Made by a program: the position numbers and the translations under genes
The notes under the pieces: generated by a model
Told to the model about the DNA's origin: nothing
Database searches by the model: none
What the model saw: the letters and a program-made list of their open reading frames with translations, nothing else
IMG/VR virus record: IMGVR_UViG_3300045125_000071
Coordinates: 1 to 64,000 of that record
Length of the DNA stretch: 64,000 nt
Reading direction: 5' to 3' (one strand)
Shown here: positions 10,706 to 62,656 of the stretch, piece after piece
How positions within the stretch are numbered: position 1 is the first letter of the stretch
Layout: every line of letters begins with the position of its first letter

Positions 10706-11535
10706 TTATAAACTAATAATAGATTGAAGATACTTTTTATATTCTCCCAATCCATTTTCTAAATTATATTTTGGTTCCCACCCATCCATCCATAAAATTT
10801 TATTTGAACATGTGTAGAACTGGTATCCAAATGGTATTTTATTTTCTTCATGATATGTAAATGGAATATCCATAATATCCAATATATCTTCGAATGTTCT
10901 TGATTCACCATAACCAACATCATAAAATTTTCCTTTAAGTTTTACATAATTGTCTTCAGCATATAAATTAGCATTTACAACATCTTTAACATATATAAAA
11001 TCTCTTTTAGGTTTTAATGGGAATAATTTACATTCTTCATGTTTTCTATGTTTAATAAACGACTGATATGCGACAGATGACATCCGTCCTTTATGTTCTT
11101 CCCCTGGACCATACACATTAAAATATCTAAGTGCAATACCATTGTTTGATATTACATATTTCTCTGCAACGTATTTGCTCCACCCATAAAGATTAGATGG
11201 ATATTTCCCATTATCACCATAATTCGCTGCCGATGATGAATAAATCATTTTTGTGTTAGTCTTTACACAATAATCAGTTAAAATCTTTGTGAATTCAAAA
11301 TTTAACTTCATCATGTAATTAACATCTGTCTCTAATGTATCAGAACATGCCCCAACATGAAAAATAACTTTTGGGTTGTTCTTTTTAAGAATACCTAAAG
11401 GTTTTCATCCCAATCAGAATCATCAAATATATCTTCGTTTATTTCAATAACAAAATATGAAGACATTCTTCTAATTGTGTTAGCTAAATTTTTTCCTATG
11501 AACCCTTTTGCCCCTGTTACTATAACATTTACCAT
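10706..11535 (-). CDS. hldD: ADP-L-glycero-D-manno-heptose 6-epimerase-like extended SDR (one indel region)
   Basis: VTGAKGFIG Rossmann motif at 11535 start; YSSSAANYG, YGWSK (YxxxK), LRYFNVYGPGEEHKGRMSSV, RDFIYVKDV. Confidence 0.85.
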
Positions 11536-12268
11536 GGTGTTACTACTCCTCTTTTTGATACTACTATTGATGACATTTCATTTTGCAACTACAATAGAGT
11601 CTAAAATGTTTTTGTTTGATGATATTTTAAAATAAACGATGCTGTAAATGTATCTCCAGCACCACTAACATCTATAGTTTCCTTTGGTGATGGTGATGGG
11701 AATATATCATTTTTGTATTTGACACCTTTAGACCCTAATGTGATTAAAATATTATCAAAATTTTTAAACCTTGATTATTTTTCGCTTCGTTTTCATTTAA
11801 CTTAACAAATGTGAATTTACTTATTGTTTCATCATCAAGTATTTTTTTTGAATCAAGTATAGATAACTTAGAAAGATTACCGATAATATTTAATGATTTA
11901 ATATTTAAAAACCCTTTATCATAATCACTTACAATTACAATGTCGTATTTTGGTATTTTTTCTAATAATTCGTTAGTTAGATTTATACCAGATATATTTT
12001 CCTCACCTTCATCTAATCTTAAAAACATATGATTACTTTTTTTATCAACGTATCTTGTCTTTGTAATTTTTTCATTTTGAAAAATTTGATTGATATTCAA
12101 TGATTTATCAAGTGATTTAAGATTGTTTAAAACATTACCTGACATTCCTTTATTTCTTATAATTTCTATTGGATTTAAAACAGGTACAGGTGCTTCTGGT
12201 GATAATCTTTTACAATCCCCATAAATAAAAACATCATCACAAACCTCACCTATTATTAATATTTTCAT
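11529..12268 (-). CDS. hldE: D-glycero-D-manno-heptose-7-phosphate kinase (stand-alone HldE/RfaE PfkB domain)
   Basis: RLSPEAPVPV, SDYDKG, KLNENEA and (after a frameshift) DVSGAGDT; stop overlaps the hldD start. Confidence 0.85.
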
Positions 12269-12330: not shown

Positions 12331-12825
12331 TTAATTCTTAATATTGTCGATTGAAATTATATATTTTGATATGTTATCAATACCGTCATCTATATTTTTA
12401 AAATAAATCCTTTCTTCTTGCTCATCATAATCCGCCAGTTTGATTAAAAAATCTCTCACAACATTTTCTGGTTCATTTTCTAACCAATCGTATTCCCAAC
12501 TATTTTCATAATTCCACCCTGGCATGTAGGCAAATGGTTTAATTTTATATTTATTAGATAATTTATCCCCATCTAATGTAATTCTATAATCAGTTTTAAC
12601 TTGCCAAGTCGTATTCCTTTTATGAAAATTTTTATTTCTTGTAAAAGAAATATAGTTTAGTTGATGTCCTCTATAAAATTCTTCTGAAGTATTTAATTTA
12701 TTTGTTTTTAAAATGTTTTCTAAACCAGTTTTAGAAGTATAATGGTACAATAATCCGACTTGCTTTGATTCATTCAAAACAATAATCATGGATTTAATTC
12801 TTGATATTTGTTCTTGTAAATTCAT
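12331..12825 (-). CDS. putative ADP-ribosyltransferase-fold protein with an N-terminal pro-peptide
   Basis: MNLQEQISRIKSMIIVLNE leader, then LYHYTS, YISFTR and DEQEERI, in the order expected for ART catalytic motifs. Confidence 0.45.
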   Translation of the reverse strand: MNLQEQISRIKSMIIVLNESKQVGLLYHYTSKTGLENILKTNKLNTSEEFYRGHQLNYISFTRNKNFHKRNTTWQVKTDYRITLDGDKLSNKYKIKPFAYMPGWNYENSWEYDWLENEPENVVRDFLIKLADYDEQEERIYFKNIDDGIDNISKYIISIDNIKN

Positions 12826-12829
12826 AATA

Positions 12830-12836
12830 ATAAATA
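12830..12836 (-). promoter_or_regulatory. TATTTAT late-promoter candidate
   Basis: 4 nt upstream of ATG at 12825. Confidence 0.65.
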
Positions 12837-13628
12837 TTATACCACCATTGATTTATCTTCAATTGGTTTGTAGTGTATAATTTCTATTTTACCATCATCA
12901 TGAATCAATATTGCTGTCATTGATTCGACCCAGTCACCTGAATTTAAATAATGAACATTATCAATAATTCTATCCATTTCTTGGTGAATATGTCCACATA
13001 TTACTCCTTGACATCCATGATATTCGGCCATTTTTGCTGCGGTATTTTCAAAATCATTGACATAGTTTGTGGCGGTCTTTACTTTTTGTTTCAATGGTTT
13101 TGATATTGATTTATATTTAAAACCTCTGAATTTTCTCCATTTATTATATTGCGTATTCATCCATAACGCAATATCATAACCAACACTACCAATTTTTGAT
13201 AACCATTTATATTTTAACATGAAAATATCGATTTCATCGCCATGAAAAACAAAGTATCTTTTATTTTCAAATTTATCTTGGGTAATCCATTTATTAATAT
13301 TTATAACATGATTTTTTACTATTTTTATATTACCCATGTTAAAACCAATGTAGTCATCTAAGAATTCATCATGGTTTCCTCTAACCCATATGACTTCAGT
13401 TGTTTCAGATATTTTCAATAGTTTATTTACAACTTTAGTATGTTTTTTCTTCCATTTTGAACCTCTTTTCAATGCCCATCCATCTATTATATCTCCATTC
13501 AAAATTAAAGTATTACAAGAGGTATTGTCTAAAAATTCTATTATTTCATTTGTCTTTGAATCTCTTGTACCCAAATGTAAATCAGAAATTACAATCATAT
13601 TAACCATTCTATCAGTTTTATAAAACAA
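12837..13628 (-). CDS. metallophosphoesterase of the LpxH2/PlcP (phospholipase C) type
   Basis: All five motifs: ISDLHLG, NGDIIDGW, RGNHDEF, FHGDE, ICGHIH; C-terminal YLNSGDWVESMTA. Confidence 0.85.
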   Translation of the reverse strand: MFYKTDRMVNMIVISDLHLGTRDSKTNEIIEFLDNTSCNTLILNGDIIDGWALKRGSKWKKKHTKVVNKLLKISETTEVIWVRGNHDEFLDDYIGFNMGNIKIVKNHVININKWITQDKFENKRYFVFHGDEIDIFMLKYKWLSKIGSVGYDIALWMNTQYNKWRKFRGFKYKSISKPLKQKVKTATNYVNDFENTAAKMAEYHGCQGVICGHIHQEMDRIIDNVHYLNSGDWVESMTAILIHDDGKIEIIHYKPIEDKSMVV

Positions 13629-13680
13629 ATGGTTAGTAACACCGTACTAACAATTATTAATTCTAAATTTATTTTCCTTT

Positions 13681-14355
13681 TCATGACCAATAATTATGTG
13701 ATTTGTAAAACCAAGATTTATTATTTCTATTAAACCAACTTTTTATGATTAGTACATACATCCACATAACACCTTTTTTATCAAATCGTCTGCCAGATGT
13801 ATATATATACTTTTTAACTAACTTATGTCTATCTTTAAGTATCATCCTACTTAATAACCAATCTTCGGCAACTTTTACGTTTTCGTTAAATTTTCCACAT
13901 TCGATAAATTTTTTTGTTCTCCATAATTGAAATCCACCTATTACAAAAGTCTCTGGTAGTATTTTTTGTAATAAATGAAACCCATTCCATAACCAATCAT
14001 ATTTTTTATCATCACATCGATATATACAAGAAACCAAATCATATTCGTCAATCGATTTTAAACAAGTTTCAATTAACTTTGTATCATATATCATCATATC
14101 CGCATCTAAAAATAAAACGAAAGGGGTTTGACATAAATCAAACCCCTTGTTTCTTGCAATAGATGGCAATCCACCATCGATTATTTTTATATGATTTTTG
14201 TTTTTAACATAATCATGTAATTCAACGTCTTTAATATCTGAAGAATCTGCAATAATTATATCAAAATTTATAGATTGTAATTCTAATAATTTTAAGCATT
14301 TTATAAGTGTATGACCTTCATTTTTTGATGGTATAACAATTGTTAGAATATTCAT
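13681..14355 (-). CDS. family 2 glycosyltransferase (GT-A)
   Basis: IVIPSKNE, IIIADSSD, ARNKG, LFLDADM (DxD), AEDW, TSGRRF. Confidence 0.9.
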   Translation of the reverse strand: MNILTIVIPSKNEGHTLIKCLKLLELQSINFDIIIADSSDIKDVELHDYVKNKNHIKIIDGGLPSIARNKGFDLCQTPFVLFLDADMMIYDTKLIETCLKSIDEYDLVSCIYRCDDKKYDWLWNGFHLLQKILPETFVIGGFQLWRTKKFIECGKFNENVKVAEDWLLSRMILKDRHKLVKKYIYTSGRRFDKKGVMWMYVLIIKSWFNRNNKSWFYKSHNYWS

Positions 14356-14360
14356 CTATT

Positions 14361-14367
14361 ATAAATA
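14361..14367 (-). promoter_or_regulatory. TATTTAT late-promoter candidate for the GT2-phosphoesterase pair
   Basis: 5 nt upstream of ATG at 14355. Confidence 0.65.
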
Positions 14368-14383
14368 TCATATATTTTTTTGT

Positions 14384-17300
14384 TTATATGCGTGTAATTT
14401 CGCAACTTGACCCAGAACAAGCCATTGAACCATATTCTCCAATGTCCTTATATTGTGGTTTATCAAGAATTTCGCCAAAGTTAACTTCCTTGAACTGACG
14501 AGTAACGGTTTCCCACTTGTGGAAAAGATGCACATCCTTCAAGCAATATACCATTTTTCTCATGTCACCCTTAAAGTAATTCTTAGCGAATTTCTTTGCC
14601 CTATCTAACCAATATTTCTTCAATAATACTTGTTCCCTTGTTCCTGTAATTGGTAGAGCATATTCTGTGCCCATATTAATTAAAGTATCACAAGCTAACC
14701 AAAGGTTGTTGTCGAAGTAATGGAGACCATCTACAACCAATCCAGAAGCCAATACAGCGCCTTTTCCATATTCCTCGACAAGTTCTTCGAGGTTAAGTAC
14801 TGAGGTGAATGGTGCTTGGTTAAAATCCTTATCGCCGTAGTCTGACATGAATGATACCGCAGTAAATTCTTCTTTATTATCCCAAATGTAATCTACAATA
14901 ACATCCTTGTCATCAATGATTACAGTGCAACTGGTATTGTGGTTTACAGGATTATATATACATTTTTCTGGATTTGTACCAGCATTAACCCAGTTTTGTT
15001 GGACTAATTTGATAAGTTCAAGGTGTTTAATACCCTTCATATCTTTTTTGAACAACCCTTTTTTAGGGTTCTCAACAGGGACGAATACAACATAATCACT
15101 TTTTGTTTGCGACCAAACACTATCTTCTAATAAGAAGTCCATATTATCAACCAACCATTTAGCAGTATTGGATTCTTTGTTTAATTGCATGACTCTGAAA
15201 TATTTTTCAGAATGTTCTGGATGAATACCAGATGCTGTACCAAGAACTACAGATGCATTACCTGAAGGTTTAACGCAAGTGGTTCTTGCTGCCTGATTAA
15301 TATCAATAACTTCTGCAAGTTCCTTATTTGTTTTCTTAACAATCTCAGCACCTTCTTTAAGAAGTTCGGCGTTGAATAACATCGGATTATTCATCCAACC
15401 AGTTATGCTCACACCAAGCAACGCCTCTCTTGCAAAAATCTTTTCACTAACCTCTCCAAGATATGGGAAACTGTTATATCCCGCCTGAAGTGTACCAAGG
15501 ATTGTCGCGTCTTTACATGCCTTAAAGAATTTCTCTTTTGTTGTACATTTTTCAGCATTAATCTCTGATAGGTTGCATTGTTTAGTTAAAACATTATTAA
15601 ATAACCCTTGATGTTTATATTGTTCTTCAAAACAATATGAATTGTGGAATCCTTCTAATTGTACAATACTATCAATACATTGATATTTACCCTTATATTT
15701 TACTTCACTTGGCTGAAACCTAGTTTTGGTTGACCATAATTCTCCACAATCACTAATTTGAACATACCAAACATCTCTATTTCTTGTTCCAAAGTTTGTT
15801 ACCTCGCCCTTTTTGCTACAAAGATTAACAGTAGAATTTACCCCAATTTTAGTTAATAAAAGTTGTAAATCCCTAATCTTGTTTTCTTCACCATAAATTC
15901 TGGCTTTGTTATTATATGTAATTGTTCCATCGGTATCTATCCAACCAGCAATAAATGCAAGAATTGATTTTTTACTCCAACTAAAAATTTCAGAAGGTAA
16001 ACCATCTTCATATTTTAATTTATGAGATAGTTCCTTATCTAACTTATTAAAAGTAACATTATAATATTCTGTTTCAATTCCATTATAAGATTCTTTTAAT
16101 TTTTTACCAATTGTACCATCAACAAAAGGATATTCATTAGAAAAATTACTTTCATAGACAGAAGCAAAGGGGGTTCTGTATTTATCACCTATCTTAGGAC
16201 AAGTACCATCGCCTAAAACAAAACCATAATCATAAGCATAAATTTCATCGTGACCAAAATCAAAATCATTTACATTACTTCTTGGTACTTGAAGTTTATA
16301 TTTGGTAGTTTTTAGCAATTCAATTAAATCTTTTGTCTCGATTTCTTTAAATTGTTTTTCAAATCTATTTTTAACTAACCATTTATGGTTTTCAGTACAA
16401 TCCAAATATGAACCATCATTTAATTTTACCCTAAAAAGTTTTCTATTTGTACCAGTAAGAATAGGTTTGACTTTTGACCAATTTTCTCCATTCCAAATTT
16501 CAACCTCCCTATTTTCATCAACTACCTTACCAATCATTTCAATTCCATCCTTAGTAATTAATTTTGTTTCATATGAAACACACCCTTGGATACCAAACTT
16601 ATGTTTGTTCACACTCACATAATGCTCAACATCTTCATAGTCGATTTTTGAGAAATCAACCTCATCGAGTATTGGTAATTTCAATATTTCAAAACATGGG
16701 TTGAACATATCAAACCAAGAATTTGCGAATACAAAACCAATATCGTTTGCACCATCGTTTAGTTTAACAAGATAATCAAACTGGTCTTTAGTCACTTTAC
16801 CCCTTAACAAGAGAACCGAATTGTTCGACCTTGCTCTTTGTGGATTTTCTTCTCTCCAATTACCCGTTTTAGCATGAATCATTTCGGTATCATTTGGGTC
16901 AACAATCATATTTAATGCTGACCTTCTAACCCCGCCAGACAATACCGCATCAGATGCATGACAAATGATGTCAAATGCCAAGATTGGCCTGATTTTATTT
17001 CCTTCCTTATCAATCCACCTTTCGATTAATTGTTCGATTTTTTCAAGGGATTGTTTAAGTCCATCGGGACCAGGAGCCTTGAATCCGCCACTAATGAATG
17101 TACCCTTTTCTCTAACTTGTGAATAATCAAATTTAACCTCATATCCTGCATATTCAGGGAATGGTTGGTTGTCAACAAAATATGATGACAAAAGAACGCC
17201 GAGTGAGTCCGCCCAACCTTCAATAGAGTCAGGTACAACAAATGTCTTAGCACCTAAAACCCTTTTCTGAATACGACTAAGATTATTAACAAATGGGATT

Positions 17301-17656
17301 AACAATCCGCCACCAACACCGCAACCAGATAAACCAAGATAAAATATTTCTTGGAATACTCTATTCCTCATTATGTGTGTACTAGTACAGTTATACATCC
17401 TTGTGTTATGTCTCAAAATTTCAGTATGTCTATACTGCAAATTTCTTTGAGATGCTAACACAACCTGGTCTTCCATACTTTCAAGAGCAGATTGTAGATA
17501 TTCTTCAATCTGATAATTAGAGTATTTTTGCCTATGACCATTTATAATGTCTGCACAAGCCTCTTTCCAATTTTCGTACCTTCCAATTTCATCCCTCCAT
17601 TTGAAGTAATCGGAATACAATTTTAAGTCGCTAAGAAATTTCTTACCTTTTTGCAT
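14384..17656 (-). CDS. nrdJ: class II (B12-dependent, monomeric RTPR-type) ribonucleotide reductase with intein
   Basis: YNCT, GGVRRSA, NPCFEI (radical Cys), CNLSEIN, TTCVKPSGNAS, C-terminal ACSGSSCEI; intact 1090-aa ORF. Confidence 0.93.
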   Translation of the reverse strand: MQKGKKFLSDLKLYSDYFKWRDEIGRYENWKEACADIINGHRQKYSNYQIEEYLQSALESMEDQVVLASQRNLQYRHTEILRHNTRMYNCTSTHIMRNRVFQEIFYLGLSGCGVGGGLLIPFVNNLSRIQKRVLGAKTFVVPDSIEGWADSLGVLLSSYFVDNQPFPEYAGYEVKFDYSQVREKGTFISGGFKAPGPDGLKQSLEKIEQLIERWIDKEGNKIRPILAFDIICHASDAVLSGGVRRSALNMIVDPNDTEMIHAKTGNWREENPQRARSNNSVLLLRGKVTKDQFDYLVKLNDGANDIGFVFANSWFDMFNPCFEILKLPILDEVDFSKIDYEDVEHYVSVNKHKFGIQGCVSYETKLITKDGIEMIGKVVDENREVEIWNGENWSKVKPILTGTNRKLFRVKLNDGSYLDCTENHKWLVKNRFEKQFKEIETKDLIELLKTTKYKLQVPRSNVNDFDFGHDEIYAYDYGFVLGDGTCPKIGDKYRTPFASVYESNFSNEYPFVDGTIGKKLKESYNGIETEYYNVTFNKLDKELSHKLKYEDGLPSEIFSWSKKSILAFIAGWIDTDGTITYNNKARIYGEENKIRDLQLLLTKIGVNSTVNLCSKKGEVTNFGTRNRDVWYVQISDCGELWSTKTRFQPSEVKYKGKYQCIDSIVQLEGFHNSYCFEEQYKHQGLFNNVLTKQCNLSEINAEKCTTKEKFFKACKDATILGTLQAGYNSFPYLGEVSEKIFAREALLGVSITGWMNNPMLFNAELLKEGAEIVKKTNKELAEVIDINQAARTTCVKPSGNASVVLGTASGIHPEHSEKYFRVMQLNKESNTAKWLVDNMDFLLEDSVWSQTKSDYVVFVPVENPKKGLFKKDMKGIKHLELIKLVQQNWVNAGTNPEKCIYNPVNHNTSCTVIIDDKDVIVDYIWDNKEEFTAVSFMSDYGDKDFNQAPFTSVLNLEELVEEYGKGAVLASGLVVDGLHYFDNNLWLACDTLINMGTEYALPITGTREQVLLKKYWLDRAKKFAKNYFKGDMRKMVYCLKDVHLFHKWETVTRQFKEVNFGEILDKPQYKDIGEYGSMACSGSSCEITRI
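15578..16582 (-). mobile_element. 335-aa intein with LAGLIDADG endonuclease, ending in Gln
   Basis: GIQG|CVSYETKLIT...CTENHKW...YGFVLGDG...FIAGWIDTDG...YCFEEQYKHQGLFNNVLTKQ|CNL; removal leaves a 755-aa RNR. Confidence 0.92.
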
Positions 17657-17677: not shown

Positions 17678-19045
17678 TTATTTATTATTTAATTCCTGTC
17701 TTTTAAGAAAGGCTTTCTTTGCCAATTCTTGTTTGTTTTGAACTTGTTGGTTTTCAAAACCAAGTAGTGTATTTTGTGATTCGGTATCTATATCGAGATA
17801 TTCGTTATTAAATTTACAGTTTTGGAATATGATACCATCTTTTCCTACTCTTGATTTAACTAAAGTCATTGTTGCTAAGTTGTGTTCCTTTTGTTCTAGT
17901 GTTTTACCAAGCGATAATATGACATGCGCTATTTGTGCTTTTTTGATTGAACCACCCATTTGGTCTGTACTAACAACTTCAGATGATATTGACTCTCTAT
18001 TGCCTTGGGTTGCTGTCCATATAGCAATTTCGAATTCATCTGTCATCGCCTCAAGTCTTCTCATTATTGAACCCTCACCCTTCCATTCATCACCATTGAT
18101 TGATTTTTCTGGTGCAATACAATCAACATAATCAAGAACAAGTAGGTCTATATTAAAACCATCCGAAATCATTTTTCTGATTTTTGACTTGATTTCAGAA
18201 ATAGATACATCACTACTAGCCAATTTCAATAATTTCAATTGACCAGATGATTGACTCTGTTTTTCTCTTGCAACACTTAAAACCTCTTCTTTATTTTCTG
18301 GCTGGTCATCAGGTGCTACACCACTCCAAATAGTGTAGTGTTTTCTTTTGATATCCCCTGGATTATCTTCAAAAAATATTTGAAGAACATTGTAACCACA
18401 GTTAAATGCTGTATTTGCCATTTTTGTAAGCAAGGTTGTTTTACCAGTACCTGTAGGTGCAAGTACAACCCCCAATTCACCTCTTCCTAAACCACCTTTA
18501 AGCAGATTATCAACCCCAACAATACCTGTCGGTATTGGGTGTCTATAGTCCTTCTGGAGAGCATCTTCCATGTTTTCAAACACATCAGATATCTCATCTT
18601 CTTCAAGACCAACTTGTAAAGCATCATTAAATAAACCTTCAAGTTTTTTGTATTGCTCAAAATCACCACCTTCAATGATTTTTTCCGCAATTTTTATAAC
18701 CCGTTTGAGATTTTGTTGTTTACAGAAATTCATCGCGGTTTCCTGAACATAATCAGGGTTACCATTTAAACCTTTTAATATTTCTAAGGTATCTAAATGG
18801 ATTTTGATGCCGAATCTCCGTTTTCGTTAATAAGTTTTTGTGCTAATGTCACATAATCAGGAATTCTTTCAAATTGAGAATAGAATTCCTTTATATTTTC
18901 CATTATAAATCTAAAGGAAGCATTTTCAAAATACTTACTTTCGATTAACTCGATTATTTGCTCAGCATATTTCCTATCTTCAATGATAGTCTTGATTAAT
19001 GTTTTGTTGAAAATCAAAACCAAGATATCCAAAGTTCTTTTCCAT
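17678..19045 (-). CDS. dnaB: replicative helicase, DnaB / T4 gp41-like (frameshifted)
   Basis: APTGTGKT Walker A, LLVLDYVD Walker B, IWTATQGNR, KSRVG; N-terminal part in 18793-19045. Confidence 0.9.
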
Positions 19046-38988: not shown

Positions 38989-41877
38989 CTATACCGTTAT
39001 ATTATATATTTTCAAAACGATGCTCCAGTTGGATGTGATAATGAATTCAACATCTATGAATTCTAGCGCACGAGTGGGTTTAATATAAATCTTACCCCTC
39101 AATGTGTTAGCATCAATATCCTCTGGGTCATTTGATACTGTTACTCTGAAATCTGTTAAACCTCTTTCCTTTTTAATTGATTCAAGAATTGGGTTAACTA
39201 ATCTCAAGAATTCATTTCTAACTTGTTCATCATTTTGTTCGAACAACAATCTAACCGCAACTGCTGAAATGAGTTTTCTTGCTCTAAGTAACAATCTTCT
39301 AACATTCATTCTATCCAATGCTGATTCTTTAACTTGAAGTGTTTTATTACCCCAAATAATCGTACCAGTATCAGAGAATGTTGCAATTGGGTTAATTCTT
39401 GCTTGATAAAGGTCATCTCTTTCGTCAAGTGTAAGTTTCTTGTACGCTTTAACAGAATTAACAAGACCTCTTGAATAACCAGCAACAGAGAACCAAGGAT
39501 ATGCAACATTATCAGTCAATGCTATGTTTCTAACAACTTCACAAGTAGGTGGAACATATAAATTAGTACCACTATCAGCATCTTTTACTTGTATCCATGG
39601 CCAATATGTTGCAGAATAGTTTGAATCCAAATCAGCAGCTTCTAATTCAGCAATTACAACATCAGCTGATTCTGAATTTCTAGTGTTGATTATGTATAAA
39701 GAATCCGCTCTATCTGTTTCAACCATATCGATAGCTTGTTGTGTTAAAGATGTATGGTCATAAAAGTTAATACCTGGTGTTGCGAAAACATTGATATCAA
39801 CCGCTTCTGGGTTTGCAAATGTTTGAATACCAGTTAAATAAGCGTAGTAATCGGAATTACCAACTGTTGAACTGAATACACCACTTGTTGCAACGGCAGT
39901 TGATTGGTTTGCAGTATATGTGTTTTTACCAAAAATGTATGCATCATCGTATGTTCTAACATTTCTATAGATATCCCAACCATCAAAACCACCAGAACAA
40001 GCAAATGTGAATTTTCTATTTCCAATCGGTGCTAAAAGACCTTTTGATGTACCTTCCAAATCATAAGGTGTTGTTTCGAATTCATAACCTGTTGGGGTAT
40101 TTCCAGTAAATCCAGATGCGTTTACTGACAAATGGAAACCAGGAGTTACACCTGTTACTGACGCAGAACCTTTATAAGTAAATAAGTCATTATCAAATGA
40201 AAAACCAGCTTGAGTGGATAAACCAAGAGAAACTTTCTTAATTTTATCACCATTTGAAATAACTGCTGTACCGTCTGATTCATATCTAACAACGTCACCA
40301 GCACTTAAATAACTTTTCTTATATACAACTCCACCGAGTGTTTTAGCACCAAATGTATCATTAACACTAAATCCTCTGAAACCACTAGGTACAGCATCCG
40401 TTGGGTGATTATCGGCATAGACTAATCATGATATATTTAGAAACCAATGGATAATCACCATTTGATGTACCGATTTTTTTGCGATAAATCCTGGAACATC
40501 TGGATTCATAGAACATCTAGCATATCTTTCTATTACAACCATGTTATCGTCTGTATCATTAAAATCACGAACAATTACATCGAATTCCATTTTTCTAAAT
40601 CGATATTTTGAATCATGACCTTAACTTCAGTGTTTGAAGAATTACCATCTGATACAGTAACAACACGGAATAAATCAACCACTTTATTACCTCTAACTTC
40701 TGATACAACATATGGTGATTGTGCTGTTCTCCATTCTGAGACAAATTCACTTGCATCAAGATTTGTTGTTACAGTGGTACTTAAACCTCTTATATGACCT
40801 TGGTCATATAAATTTTTAACCAAATTGCTATAATTTTTCATGTACGTAAAGTGGAAAATCAGAATAATCTCTATCATAAACGTCACTACCTAAAACTTTA
40901 GAAATGAATTTGGTAGATGATGAATCTAATGAACAATTAAATGTTTTTTCACCACCAGTATATCCAGTAACATTTATAACAAACTCACCAAGAGCATTAG
41001 AATCTAAATTATCAACTTCTGATATTGTAACACTAGTTGCACCAGTAACTTCTCTAATCAAGGTTTGTCCATCATAATGTCCTCTTGACCTTAAAGCCAT
41101 AACAATTAAATCTTCATAATTTTCATTAACATATGCACCATATGAGTATCTTGTTACGTTAAAAGTCGAACCCGTTGTATACACAAATAAGTAAGCATAT
41201 ACACTTGTTAAACCTGATGAATATAATTTGTTATACCATTCTTTTCCATTAGTATTTTCATCATTATATAATCCAGTTAATGGTGAAACTAATTCAGTAC
41301 CAGTTAAGCTAGTTGTTCCTGATGATGGTACTTTTCCTAATACAAACCATTTATCAGCATCTGTTGTACCAGTAAAACCTGAAAAATTTGCAACTAAATA
41401 ATCAGTGATTGTTTCACCATCTATTGCAAGTTTATCAGATAATTCAGTATAAAATGTACTACCTGTTATAGATGATTCTGATGTCGCATCTAATGTTCCA
41501 GATGTTGTTGTTGGTGTTGTACCAGTAACAACTAAACCACCTAAAGTTGATAAACCATAAGTTCTATATGGTTTATAACCAGTTAATCCTAATACTCTTG
41601 TTATAAACAATTGATTAGATTCTTGCAAATATGATTTTGCAACATATGGTAATTCATATTTTGGATTACCATTACCATCTTTTAAAACGGAAGTGCCTCC
41701 GAAATAAGTCCTAAAGTCATCATAATTTGTTACTAAAACTGGTTCAAATGCTGGTCCTTTTAAGGTTTCACCAACAAGACCCAATGTTGTAACACCCACA
41801 CTCTGAGCTACAAACGTCAAATCTTTTTCCGATGTGTACACACCAGGTGATACAAATACTCTGTTAGAAGTTGCCAT
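38989..41877 (-). CDS. contractile tail sheath protein (T4 gp18-like; frameshifted)
   Basis: MATSNRVFVSPGVYTSEKDL, GLVGETLKGPAFEP, FATPG, YWPW, PWFSVAG..RG, WGNKTLQ, NVRRLL, IYIKPTRALEFI. Confidence 0.95.
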
Positions 41878-61441: not shown

Positions 61442-62656
61442 ATGTCTAAAATAAAATTATTAGCAATCCCGTCAGATACACACGGCGTAGGTAAGTTTAG
61501 AATTCTTGACCCATTCAAATATATTGGGGATAACTTTTCAGATGATATCCATGTCGATATTATGTTTGATGCACCAGACCTGGATAGTACATTTGATGGT
61601 TATGACATCGTATATTTACATTCTTTTATTCACAAAACATCACACGAGGCTAATGTAAAAAGAATTAAATGGTTAAAATCAAAAGGTATCAAAGTTATTG
61701 TGGATATCGATGATTTATGGTTTGTTGACCAAAGACATCCAATGTATCATCAAGTTATTGCAACAAAAGTACCAGAAAAGAAAATTGAATTACTGAAATT
61801 AGCAGATTATGTAACAACAACAACACCAGTATTCAGTAAAACAATAAAAGATAGATTAAATCTAAAAAATGTAATTATTTTTCCGAATGCAGTAAATGAA
61901 GACGAGGAACAGTTTAAAGTAAACAAAATACCTTCTGAAAAAATTAGATTTGGGTGGCTTGGCGGCAGTAGTCATTTACATGATATTGAATTATTAGAAC
62001 AAGGAATATCAAGCATACATGCATCTTATAAAGATAAAGTTCAATTTGTTCTTTGTGGTTTTGATTTAAGAGGGACGGTAACAGAAATCAAAAAAGAAAC
62101 TGGCGAGCAAGTACAAAGACCAATACAACCACTAGAAACTGTTTGGTTTAAATATGAAAGCATATTCACAGACAAATATAGAACATTAGACCAAGAATAC
62201 AAAACATATTTGTTTAATTTCACAGAAGCACCGTATAATGATACTAATAAACCATATGTTAGAAGATGGACAAAAAACATTAATACATATGCAACGAATT
62301 ACAATCATTTTGATGTTTCATTGGCCCCTCTTGTAGAATCAATGTTTAACGCTAACAAATCACAGTTAAAAGTTATCGAAGCTGGTTTCCATAAAAAAGC
62401 TATTATTGCAAGTGAAACAAATCCTTATACCATAGATTTGGTAAATTCAATAGAAAATGGTATATTTAACAACAAGGGCAATGCGCTTCTTGTTTCATCG
62501 AGAAAAAACCATAAACAATGGGCGCAACATATGAAAAAATTAATCGAAAACCCTTCCATGATTGAAGACCTGGGAAATAGATTATACGAAACAGTAAAAG
62601 ACACATATTCATTAAAAAAGTGTGTAACGATAGAGTTCAATTTTTTAAAACCATAA
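61442..62656 (+). CDS. GT-B fold glycosyltransferase (GT4-like)
   Basis: VIVDIDDLW, ADYVTTTT..F, FPNAVN, RFGWLGG, DVSLAPL...FN..KSQLKVIEAG...IIAS. Confidence 0.85.
   Translation: MSKIKLLAIPSDTHGVGKFRILDPFKYIGDNFSDDIHVDIMFDAPDLDSTFDGYDIVYLHSFIHKTSHEANVKRIKWLKSKGIKVIVDIDDLWFVDQRHPMYHQVIATKVPEKKIELLKLADYVTTTTPVFSKTIKDRLNLKNVIIFPNAVNEDEEQFKVNKIPSEKIRFGWLGGSSHLHDIELLEQGISSIHASYKDKVQFVLCGFDLRGTVTEIKKETGEQVQRPIQPLETVWFKYESIFTDKYRTLDQEYKTYLFNFTEAPYNDTNKPYVRRWTKNINTYATNYNHFDVSLAPLVESMFNANKSQLKVIEAGFHKKAIIASETNPYTIDLVNSIENGIFNNKGNALLVSSRKNHKQWAQHMKKLIENPSMIEDLGNRLYETVKDTYSLKKCVTIEFNFLKP

What the first reader, a model, noticed from the sequence alone, without database searches (positions are those of the whole stretch)
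12837..14367. PlcP-like phospholipase C plus glycosyltransferase: a phage-borne membrane-lipid remodelling module?
Seen: an intact adjacent GT2-to-phosphoesterase pair under one late motif. The phosphoesterase has GNHD rather than the GNRD of E. coli-type LpxH, plus GDIIDGW, an amphipathic W/K-rich insert and YLNSGDWVES. Known: this architecture matches PlcP, which in P-starved bacteria (Sinorhizobium, SAR11, roseobacters) cleaves phospholipids to diacylglycerol that neighbouring glycosyltransferases convert to glycolipids, freeing phosphate. PhoH is also present (63729). Inference: the phage may swap host phospholipids for glycolipids to supply P for genome synthesis, or, given the late motif, alter the envelope for lysis or superinfection exclusion. 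I know of no description of this pair in phages.
Basis: partly seen in the sequence, partly recalled or inferred. Interest (0 to 1): 0.75.

Follow-up and report, generated by a model that had tools for sequence, protein, structure and literature searches.

The report
Phage PlcP phospholipase plus glycosyltransferase cassette
A large freshwater phage carries an intact two-gene cassette, a PlcP-type phospholipase C (not the lipid A enzyme LpxH it is usually labelled as) led by a virus-specific glycosyltransferase, that recurs in hundreds of uncultured phages and most likely turns host membrane phospholipids into phosphorus-free glycolipids.

Summary
The gene pair is real and intact on the minus strand: GT2 glycosyltransferase 13681-14355 and metallophosphoesterase 12837-13607 (ORF open to a TTG at 13628). 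Its 'late motif' is not: TATAAATA at 14360-14367 lies on the opposite strand and is no commoner in the window than chance.

The phosphoesterase belongs to the PlcP family, not LpxH:
- 42% identical to P. aeruginosa PlcP (E 1e-68), 20% to E. coli LpxH.
- 40 bits against the LpxH model (cut-off 134).
- His where every LpxH has Arg.
- In a 127-row tree it sits with verified PlcPs, inside a monophyletic phage clade next to Bacteroidota and Verrucomicrobiota PlcP-like genes.

Context points to lipid renovation. PlcP-like genes are paired with a glycosyltransferase almost everywhere: Agt GT4 in Proteobacteria, a GT-B in Bacteroidota, fused GT4-PlcP proteins in Verrucomicrobiota. In phages the partner is this GT2, seen in 60 of 80 IMG/VR loci. 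At least 572 viral contigs carry a PlcP-like gene.

The GT2 family is almost wholly viral and co-diverges with its partner (r = 0.66). Its acceptor, the enzyme activities and the benefit to the phage (phosphate supply or envelope change) remain inferred. I found no paper describing phage-encoded PlcP; virome surveys list it as 'lpxH'.

The parts
13681..14355 (-). GT2-family (GT-A fold) glycosyltransferase, 224 aa, with DAD and ED motifs and an aromatic/basic C-terminal tail. It is the upstream gene of the cassette.
   Evidence: - PF00535, 58 bits.
- AlphaFold2 model pLDDT 92, generic GT-A fold matches.
- Invariant D84/D86, E164/D165, R189/R190 in 31 homologues.
- C-terminal 39 residues hold 10 W/Y/F and 8 K/R.
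- Nearest Atlas clusters are 99-100% viral.
- No match in 50,697 GenBank phage records and none in 80 cellular PlcP loci.
12837..13607 (-). PlcP-family metallophosphoesterase (predicted Mn2+-dependent phospholipase C), 256 aa from the ATG at 13607. The ORF stays open upstream to a TTG at 13628.
   Evidence: - PF00149.
- LpxH equivalog model NF003743 gives only 40 bits against a cut-off of 134.
- 42% identity, E 1e-68, to P. aeruginosa PA3219 PlcP; 20% to E. coli LpxH.
- All metal ligands are invariant.
- Motifs GDIIDGW / GNHDE / CGHIH / GDWVES match the PlcP family.
- It falls in the PlcP clade of the tree.
- AlphaFold2 model pLDDT 89: phosphoesterase core plus helical insertion.
13608..13680 (-). 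Short spacer between the two genes, with no terminator-like site. In many relatives the two ORFs overlap.
   Evidence: Sequence; terminator scan; overlapping coordinates in L008, L012-L015 and others.
12800..14368 (.). Extent of the mobile two-gene cassette, as delimited by a roughly 90%-identical lake-metagenome contig whose flanks are unlike the window.
   Evidence: Records 14 and 19 in runs X2 and X4 cover 12800-14368, with loose ends at 12785/12800 and 14368. Flanking genes differ completely in the 94%-identical locus L006.
14360..14367 (+). It is on the strand opposite to the genes, so it is not a T4-type late promoter for the pair.
   Evidence: plus strand; 20 matches in the window against 19.9 expected.

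Best explanation
The pair is a virus-borne membrane-lipid renovation cassette.

Proposed mechanism:
1. The downstream gene encodes a cytoplasmic, membrane-interface PlcP-type phospholipase C. It has a dinuclear-metal phosphoesterase core plus an aromatic-rich helical lid.
2. During infection this enzyme cleaves host glycerophospholipids (PE, PG) into diacylglycerol and a phospho-headgroup.
3. The upstream gene encodes a small monotopic GT2 (GT-A, inverting) glycosyltransferase. It uses a UDP-sugar to glycosylate the diacylglycerol into a phosphorus-free glycolipid. This keeps the bilayer intact while lipid phosphorus is freed.
4. In this phage the cassette sits directly downstream of ribonucleotide reductase and the replicative helicase on the same strand. 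The likeliest benefit is therefore phosphate for synthesis of a genome of more than 250 kb in phosphorus-poor lake water.

What is shown: family membership of the phosphoesterase; intact catalytic residues in both proteins; the tight, co-diverging, mobile pairing; and the general PlcP-glycosyltransferase linkage, including fusions.

What is inferred: phospholipase C activity, diacylglycerol as the GT2 acceptor, timing of expression, and the benefit to the phage.
For: Family membership:
- Identity is 42% (P. aeruginosa PlcP), 37% (S. meliloti PlcP), 46% (Parabacteroides) and 23% (E. coli LpxH). Validated PlcPs are themselves only 46-47% identical to each other (PMC8528852).
- No PDB LpxH is hit by phmmer.
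- LpxH-model scores are 217-244 bits for true LpxH, 42-56 for PlcP-like paralogues in the same genomes, and 40 for the window protein.
- In the tree the PlcP clade has 99% support. The phage clade (32 rows) has 100% support and sits in a 96% subclade with Bacteroidota and Verrucomicrobiota.
- The window protein has His at the position where 'only in LpxH' there is Arg (PMC5016852).

Linkage to a glycosyltransferase:
- An Agt GT4 follows PlcP in Proteobacteria, a PF13528 GT-B follows it in about 28 Bacteroidota loci, and a GT4 precedes it in Verrucomicrobiota.
- GT4 and PlcP are fused in a single ORF in L034, L030 and L069.
- The GT2 is immediately upstream in 60 of 80 viral loci, and distant GT2 relatives are still next to PlcP-like genes.
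- Divergences of the two genes correlate, r = 0.66.
- The cassette boundaries are seen in metagenomes.

Other support:
- The characterised pathway is PlcP producing diacylglycerol, then Agt producing MGDG/GADG (PMC4796936, PMC9239053, PMC8528852).
- Phosphorus context: relatives come from lake water, the Mosig homologue is next to pstS, and PhoH is in this genome.
- Unpaired phage copies lie among primase, nuclease and ligase genes.
Against: - No activity data exist for any Bacteroidota, Verrucomicrobiota or phage member of the family.
- The GT2 is unrelated to Agt. Its fold matches are generic: TarS/TarP, PNAG synthase and phenolic-glycolipid transferases rank above beta-monoglucosyl-diacylglycerol synthase at rank 21. 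Diacylglycerol as acceptor therefore rests on context alone.
- This phage record has no pstS and no recognised promoter or timing signal for the pair.
- About 10 of 80 viral loci carry the PlcP-like gene without any adjacent glycosyltransferase.
- The host is unknown.
Confidence: 0.55

Rival explanations
1. Same chemistry, different purpose. The cassette does convert phospholipid to glycolipid, but it is selected because the altered membrane blocks superinfecting phages, changes receptor display or grazing susceptibility, or prepares the envelope for lysis. Phosphate release would be a by-product.
For: - Lipid-remodelled cells differ in membrane proteome and in susceptibility to predators and phages (PMC9457565, PMC9804370, PMC9938194).
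- The window also carries other envelope-related genes: heptose genes at 10706-12268 and a second glycosyltransferase at 61442-62656.
- This record has no pstS.
Against: - The only timing argument, the late motif, fails.
- The cassette here, and unpaired copies elsewhere, lie among nucleotide-metabolism and replication genes rather than lysis or tail-fibre genes.
- The Mosig copy neighbours pstS.
- The habitat is typically phosphorus-limited lake water.
Confidence: 0.17
2. The pair acts on another membrane-bound phosphodiester or pyrophosphate substrate. The PlcP-like enzyme would cleave, for example, CDP-diacylglycerol, undecaprenyl-pyrophosphate-linked sugars or a host-specific phospholipid. 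The GT2 would modify a polyprenol carrier or a cell-surface glycan, remodelling envelope glycans rather than bulk phospholipid.
For: - GT2 fold matches include polyprenol-phosphate and wall-polymer enzymes: GtrB, ArnC, TarS/TarP and PglI.
- The phage clade is separated from every tested PlcP by a long stem (1.02) and carries an 8-residue insertion of its own.
- No member of the Bacteroidota/Verrucomicrobiota/phage subclade has been assayed.
Against: - The helical lid and signature motifs are conserved with verified PlcPs.
- The GT2 has no transmembrane helices like those of GtrB or ArnC, and no gtrA/gtrC-type neighbours.
- Its nearest cellular look-alikes act on hydrophobic acceptors: GT21-like and carotenoid glycosyltransferases, and archaeal fusions with PF13528.
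Confidence: 0.2
3. It is a lipid A enzyme. The phosphoesterase is LpxH (UDP-2,3-diacylglucosamine diphosphatase), as databases annotate it, boosting or altering host LPS synthesis together with the neighbouring heptose genes.
For: - Automatic names of homologues.
- The closest solved fold is LpxH, TM 0.54-0.57.
- Heptose-pathway genes lie downstream.
- Virome papers file viral 'lpxH' under LPS biosynthesis.
Against: - 40 bits against the 134-bit cut-off.
- 20% identity to E. coli LpxH, and no phmmer hit to any PDB LpxH.
- His replaces the LpxH-specific Arg.
- The tree separates it from true LpxH with 99% support.
- Genomes with true LpxH carry a separate PlcP-like paralogue, and that paralogue is the phage protein's relative.
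- The heptose genes are not linked to the cassette in any relative and are frame-broken here.
Confidence: 0.03

Closest known systems
Bacterial PlcP-Agt lipid renovation pathway (S. meliloti SMc00171; Phaeobacter MED193_17359; SAR11 HTCC7211 PB7211_983/960; P. aeruginosa PA3219/PA3218)
   Same: - The phosphoesterase family is the same: 37-42% identity, the same four signature motifs and the same helical insertion.
- The operon logic is the same: PlcP next to a glycosyltransferase.
- The predicted chemistry is the same: phospholipid to diacylglycerol to glycolipid.
   Different: - It is encoded by a virus.
- The glycosyltransferase is an unrelated GT2 (GT-A, inverting) instead of the GT4 Agt (GT-B, retaining), so the product is probably a beta- rather than alpha-linked glycolipid. 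That is my inference from glycosyltransferase family mechanisms.
- The gene order is glycosyltransferase first.
- There is no Pho box context.
- The phage clade is a separate deep lineage with its own 8-residue insertion.
LpxH (UDP-2,3-diacylglucosamine diphosphatase, lipid A pathway)
   Same: Same superfamily and overall architecture: a calcineurin-like core with a helical insertion domain that holds acyl chains. It is the closest solved fold.
   Different: - 20% identity.
- GNHD instead of GNRD.
- A different lid sequence.
- Below the family cut-off.
- A separate clade in the tree.
Verrucomicrobiota / Acidobacteriota GT4-PlcP fusion proteins and Bacteroidota PlcP-like + PF13528 GT-B operons (uncharacterised)
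   Same: These are the nearest cellular relatives of the phage enzyme (44-49% identity). In the fusions the order is glycosyltransferase then PlcP, as in the phage cassette.
   Different: The glycosyltransferases are GT-B enzymes, not homologous to the phage GT2. They are cellular, and their function is also untested.
GT2 diacylglycerol glycosyltransferases (cyanobacterial beta-monoglucosyl-diacylglycerol synthase MgdA; Mycoplasma MG517; the latter from my own knowledge)
   Same: GT-A fold, DxD motif and a lipid acceptor at the membrane interface. MgdA appears among the fold matches (rank 21, TM 0.64).
   Different: The known enzymes are much longer (340-480 aa), with their own membrane regions. 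The match is no better than to many unrelated GT2 enzymes.
Phosphate-stress auxiliary metabolic genes of phages (pstS, phoH, phoA in cyanophages and pelagiphages)
   Same: The proposed benefit is the same: easing phosphorus limitation of phage genome replication. The Mosig homologue is adjacent to pstS.
   Different: The known genes act on uptake or regulation. This cassette would mine an internal host pool, the membrane phospholipid.

Membership tests
PlcP (metallophosphoesterase-type phospholipase C) | All calcineurin-like metal-binding motifs intact (D-x-H, GD, GNH, H, GH, GHxH) | tested here: met
   D16, H18, D46, N85, H86, H129, H213 and H215 are invariant in alignments A1 and A4.
PlcP (metallophosphoesterase-type phospholipase C) | Groups with experimentally verified PlcPs, to the exclusion of LpxH, in a phylogeny | tested here: met
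   The PlcP clade of 117 rows holds P. aeruginosa PA3219 and S. meliloti SMc00171 with 99% SH-aLRT support. True LpxH is the outgroup.
PlcP (metallophosphoesterase-type phospholipase C) | Family signature motifs GDI[IV]DGW, GNHD[ED], CGHIH, GDW[VI]E, plus the aromatic-rich helical insertion | tested here: met
   motif tallies by group; helices 124-196 inserted in the core; composition; PMC5016852 on the PaLpxH2 insertion.
PlcP (metallophosphoesterase-type phospholipase C) | Operon partner that makes a phosphorus-free lipid from diacylglycerol (Agt GT4, Pgt, BtaAB) | tested here: inconclusive
   A glycosyltransferase is adjacent and co-inherited. It is a GT2 of unknown acceptor, not Agt.
PlcP (metallophosphoesterase-type phospholipase C) | Mn2+-dependent phospholipase C activity on PE/PG/PC yielding diacylglycerol | not testable with these tools
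   Needs an enzyme assay or lipidomics.
PlcP (metallophosphoesterase-type phospholipase C) | Induction by phosphate starvation (Pho box) | not tested
   The host and its Pho box are unknown, and phage transcription signals were not identified.
LpxH | Score above the NCBIfam equivalog cut-off (NF003743, 134 bits) | tested here: not met
   40 bits. True LpxH scores 217-244 bits.
LpxH | Arg in the GNRD motif, which binds the beta-phosphate of UDP-2,3-diacylglucosamine | tested here: not met
   The window has GNHDE; the 4 true LpxH sequences have GNRDF. The role of the Arg is described in PMC5016852.
LpxH | Phosphoesterase core plus helical insertion fold | tested here: met
   The best PDB matches are LpxH, at TM 0.54-0.57 and 15-18% identity. 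The fold is shared by the whole LpxH/PlcP superfamily.
Agt (GT4 glycolipid glycosyltransferase) | GT4 / GT-B fold, homologous to A. tumefaciens, SAR11 and P. aeruginosa Agt | tested here: not met
   The window glycosyltransferase is PF00535, a GT-A fold. An Agt query finds nothing next to the window gene, although 6 other viral contigs do have Agt-like genes.
GtrB-type phage bactoprenol glucosyltransferase (serotype conversion) | GT2 domain followed by two C-terminal transmembrane helices, with gtrA and gtrC neighbours | tested here: not met
   224 aa with no long hydrophobic segment; the model ends in short amphipathic helices. The neighbours are RNR and the phosphoesterase. The GtrB match is only 31.6 bits.
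T4-type late transcription unit | TATAAATA on the coding strand upstream of the gene, enriched in the genome | tested here: not met
   The octamer is on the plus strand while the genes are on the minus strand; 20 observed against 19.9 expected.

The most novel reading that the evidence does not exclude
Phages of phosphorus-poor lakes, and some marine phages, carry their own lipid-renovation pathway. It would consist of a PlcP phospholipase C with a virus-specific GT2 diacylglycerol glycosyltransferase. During infection it would strip phosphorus from the host's membrane phospholipids to feed phage DNA synthesis, while replacing them with a glycolipid the host itself may not make. That would be a new class of auxiliary metabolic function, one that has been hidden in virome surveys under the label 'lpxH / LPS biosynthesis'.
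Probability: 0.4. Interest if true: 0.8.

Novelty: new variant of a known kind. Interest (0 to 1): 0.68.

Why it matters
- Membrane phospholipid is one of the few large phosphorus pools inside a starved cell. By my own rough estimate it holds millions of P atoms per cell, comparable with the roughly 0.5-0.7 million P atoms in one 250-335 kb genome. A phage that can tap this pool would partly free its replication from phosphate supply.
- If so, this adds an internal-mining strategy to the known uptake-type phosphate genes of phages (pstS, phoH).
- Virome papers that count viral 'lpxH' as LPS biosynthesis would need re-reading.
- It predicts glycolipid signatures of infection in lakes.
- It offers a compact, apparently self-sufficient two-enzyme lipid-conversion module, plus a new virus-specific GT2 family, for biochemical study.
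- A 2025 virocell study states that little is known about how lipid remodelling plays out in infected cells (PMC12282109).

Tried and rejected
- **LpxH assignment:** rejected on score, motif and tree.
- **T4 late promoter:** rejected; wrong strand and not enriched. The sigma-70-like and terminator scans are at or below shuffle expectation. The one good hairpin (14121-14148) lies inside the GT2 coding sequence.
- **Functional link to the downstream heptose genes and orf164:** rejected. Neither accompanies the cassette in any relative, and the heptose genes are frame-broken.
- **Reading the GT2 acceptor from structure:** uninformative. PDB profile search, Foldseek against PDB and Foldseek against Swiss-Prot models all gave generic GT-A matches.
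- **Near-identical DNA in GenBank phages:** none. The GT2 has no tblastn match in GenBank phages.
- **Rfam scan of the window:** nothing. No tRNAs either.
- **Sequencing runs:** only relatives, with shares of 0.05-0.08. One metatranscriptome holds two 100-nt identical pieces inside the phosphoesterase gene. That does not prove transcription.
- **pstS in the phage record:** absent.
- **One paper (PMC6052262, Mn dependence of PlcP):** not held.
- **Host identification:** not achieved. Low Shine-Dalgarno use (8 of 58 ORFs) and tail-sheath relatives (Microcystis and Flavobacterium phages) are only hints.
Full report
**What is there**

The window is the first 64 kb of a 251-kb IMG/VR virus record, about 75% complete by CheckV and about 30% G+C. 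It is a distant T4-like myovirus. It encodes baseplate wedge and tail sheath proteins, and the sheath is about 40% identical to those of a Microcystis phage and 38% to Flavobacterium phages.

The finding lies in a run of minus-strand genes:
- a DnaB-like helicase (17678-18733);
- a class II ribonucleotide reductase with an intein (14384-17656);
- a 224-aa GT2 glycosyltransferase (13681-14355);
- a calcineurin-like phosphoesterase (12837-13628 as the longest ORF);
- a 164-aa ORF with no family;
- two heptose-pathway genes.

The phosphoesterase most likely starts at the ATG at 13607, giving 256 aa like its 94%-identical relative P0001. Both genes of the pair are intact.

**Checking the observation**

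The insert is rich in aromatic and basic residues. PhoH is real, at 63828-64442, and runs off the window end.

The 'late motif' does not hold. TATAAATA at 14360-14367 is on the plus strand, while the genes are on the minus strand. The octamer is found 20 times in the window against 19.9 expected. No promoter or terminator signal stands out around the pair. The timing of expression is therefore unknown.

**PlcP or LpxH**

*Sequence scores.* The protein scores 40 bits against NCBI's LpxH equivalog model, whose cut-off is 134. It has no phmmer hit to any solved LpxH. It is 20% identical to E. coli LpxH (E 2e-5) but 42% identical over 251 residues to P. aeruginosa PA3219 (E 1e-68), lid domain included.

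*Identity of the reference proteins.* I identified PA3219 by its neighbours: the Agt1 glycosyltransferase, then an adenylate cyclase (PMC8528852). I identified S. meliloti SMc00171 (37% identical) by its position beside the sinR and sinI quorum-sensing genes. The locus numbering there is from my own knowledge. Verified PlcPs are only 46-47% identical to one another.

*The diagnostic residue.* Okada et al. showed that the Arg of GNRD is found 'only in LpxH ... in all species' and binds the beta-phosphate of the substrate. They also showed that the paralogue PaLpxH2 has a different, aromatic-rich insertion (PMC5016852). That PaLpxH2 is PA3219 is my own knowledge. The window protein has His at this position.

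*Signature motifs.* Tallies by group separate the two families cleanly:

| Group | Motifs |
|---|---|
| PlcP family, including all 32 phage sequences | GDI[IV]DGW, GNHD[ED], CGHIH, GDW[VI]E |
| True LpxH | GDLFE.W, GNRDF, HGHTH |

*Paralogues in one genome.* Genomes that have a true LpxH (217-244 bits), or a Bacteroidota LpxH-like gene (73-98 bits), carry a second, PlcP-like paralogue (42-56 bits). That paralogue is the phage protein's relative.

*Tree.* I built a 127-row maximum-likelihood tree rooted on true LpxH.
- The PlcP family, with both verified members, has 99% support.
- A subclade of Bacteroidota, Verrucomicrobiota and phages has 96% support.
- All 32 phage sequences form one clade with 100% support on a long stem (1.02).
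- No cellular sequence among 595 hits exceeds 49% identity to the window protein, whereas phage relatives reach 56-94%.

*Structure.* The AlphaFold2 model (pLDDT 89) has the phosphoesterase core with a helical insertion. LpxH is the nearest solved fold, but only at TM 0.54-0.57.

The protein is a member of the PlcP family in a deep, virus-specific lineage.

**The pairing**

The GT2 lies immediately upstream of the PlcP-like gene in 18 of 21 phage-like loci first collected. Their best 80 loci break down as follows:

| Arrangement | Loci |
|---|---|
| GT2 immediately upstream | 60 |
| GT2 downstream | 1 |
| GT2 one gene away | 1 |
| Agt-like GT4 downstream (the proteobacterial arrangement) | 6 |
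| A short GT-B (PF13528-type) match upstream | 1 |
| Too little upstream sequence to tell | 2 |
| No adjacent glycosyltransferase (neighbours: primase, PD-(D/E)XK nuclease, DNA ligase) | 9 |

Further points:
- The two ORFs often overlap.
- Flanking genes differ even in the 94%-identical relative.
- A lake-metagenome contig about 90% identical matches exactly 12800-14368 and diverges on both sides.
- Across 71 distinct pairs the two proteins' distance matrices correlate (r = 0.66, Mantel p = 0.001). The GT2 evolves faster.

The pair is therefore a co-inherited, mobile two-gene cassette.

The GT2 family behaves as a dedicated partner:
- Its nearest Atlas clusters are 99-100% viral.
- It has no match in 50,697 GenBank phage records.
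- It has no match beside any of the 80 cellular PlcP-like genes.
- Members as distant as 140-180 bits are still next to a PlcP-like gene, in either order.

**Why lipid renovation is the best reading**

In cells, PlcP cleaves phospholipids to diacylglycerol. The adjacent glycosyltransferase Agt then makes MGDG and GADG (PMC4796936, PMC9239053, PMC8528852).

I found that linkage of a PlcP-like gene to some glycosyltransferase is nearly universal, and that the glycosyltransferase has been replaced more than once:
- Agt follows PlcP in Proteobacteria.
- A PF13528 GT-B follows it in about 28 Bacteroidota loci.
- An Agt-like GT4 precedes it in Verrucomicrobiota.

In Haloferula, Luteolibacter and a Vicinamibacterales genome the GT4 and the PlcP-like domain are fused into one ORF of 648-659 aa. 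The order is glycosyltransferase then PlcP. These fused proteins are among the closest cellular relatives of the phage enzyme.

The phage GT2 fits a membrane-interface enzyme:
- It has a confident GT-A fold (pLDDT 92) with DAD and ED motifs.
- It has an aromatic/basic C-terminal tail.
- Its nearest cellular look-alikes act on hydrophobic acceptors, or are fused to PF13528.

Its acceptor cannot be read from the fold, because the matches are generic. Diacylglycerol glycosylation is therefore an inference from context.

**Purpose**

A role in phosphate supply is plausible but not shown. The points in favour:
- Relatives come from lake water. That lakes are typically phosphorus-limited is my own knowledge.
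- The Pelagibacter phage Mosig homologue is the divergent neighbour of pstS.
- The cassette here follows ribonucleotide reductase and helicase.
- Unpaired copies elsewhere sit among replication genes.

Against it, this record has no pstS, and nothing fixes the timing of expression. An envelope-alteration benefit with the same chemistry, or a different lipid substrate, remain open. They are listed as rivals.

**Comparison with what is known, and novelty**

The closest known system is the bacterial PlcP-Agt pathway. This cassette differs from it in three ways:
- it is viral;
- it uses a non-homologous, virus-specific GT2;
- it belongs to a separate deep lineage.

My literature searches gave the following:
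- 'PlcP' with 'phage' returned no paper on a phage-encoded enzyme.
- 'plcP', 'viral' and 'auxiliary metabolic' together returned nothing.
- A broader search returned only host-side studies.
- Virome papers list viral 'lpxH' under LPS biosynthesis.
- Isolated phages carry unpaired homologues annotated as LpxH.

I therefore rate it a new variant of a known kind. Its interest is fairly high for viral ecology and lipid biology, tempered by the absence of any biochemical evidence.

**Caveats**

- The tree was a quick search with SH-aLRT support only.
- The 80-locus samples are the best-scoring ones, not random.
- IMG/VR contigs may include some cellular fragments. The six Agt-type loci could be such.
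- The assembly seems to contain indel errors, since the essential tail sheath gene is split over frames. The frame breaks in neighbouring genes should therefore not be read as decay.

Noticed in passing
window 10706-12268 (-): The heptose-7-phosphate kinase (HldE domain I) and the ADP-heptose 6-epimerase (HldD) are each split over different frames with internal stops. Neither accompanies the cassette in related phages.
   Followed up: partly
window 38989-41877 (-): The tail sheath gene is also broken into at least three frame pieces. Because it is essential, indel errors in the assembly are likely, and the heptose-gene breaks may be artefacts too.
   Followed up: partly
window 14384-17656 (-): The class II (B12-type) ribonucleotide reductase is interrupted by an intein with a LAGLIDADG domain.
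   Followed up: partly
L034 4837-6783; L030 4840-6798; L069 4911-6890: In Verrucomicrobiota and one Acidobacteriota genome an Agt-like GT4 and the PlcP-like domain are fused in one ORF of 648-659 aa. This is a Rosetta-stone link that I did not find described in the papers I read.
   Followed up: partly
L111, L112, L122; L044, L046, L052 (about 5.7 kb upstream of the PlcP-like gene): Bacteroidota carry two LpxH-like paralogues. Even the more LpxH-like one (73-98 bits, below the cut-off) has GNHD rather than the 'universal' GNRD. B. thetaiotaomicron has no LpxI. Which gene does the lipid A step in this phylum is therefore unclear from these data.
   Followed up: partly
window 12331-12825 (-): A 164-aa ORF directly downstream of the cassette has no family. 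Its only hit is a sub-threshold match to a HYD1 ADP-ribosyltransferase model (17 bits, E 0.0097). It is absent next to the cassette in relatives.
   Followed up: partly
L001 4885-6720 (Pelagibacter phage Mosig): An isolated SAR11 phage has an unpaired PlcP-family gene, annotated as LpxH, as the divergent neighbour of a phosphate-binding pstS gene.
   Followed up: partly
L199, L201, L202, L208, L209, L211: Six IMG/VR contigs, one of them 338 kb, carry the proteobacterial arrangement of a PlcP-like gene followed by an Agt-like GT4. They are either other phage lineages that captured the whole host operon, or cellular fragments.
   Followed up: no
window 14121-14148 (-): A 12-bp G+C-rich hairpin followed by a T-run lies inside the GT2 coding sequence. 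It is probably not a terminator.
   Followed up: no
L129 3781-5705 (MT836169.1, 'Bacteriophage sp.', unverified): In this human-faecal scaffold the PlcP-like gene (42% identical) is followed by an overlapping 372-aa ORF, as in Bacteroidales chromosomes. The record may be bacterial rather than viral.
   Followed up: no
window 13421-13569: A metatranscriptome run (X5) holds two 100-nt contigs identical to this stretch of the phosphoesterase gene. DNA carry-over is not excluded.
   Followed up: partly
window 61442-62656 (+): A second, unrelated glycosyltransferase lies near PhoH and a dUTPase-like gene. It matches phrog_7162 and has a weak GT-B (Glyco_trans_1_4) hit.
   Followed up: no
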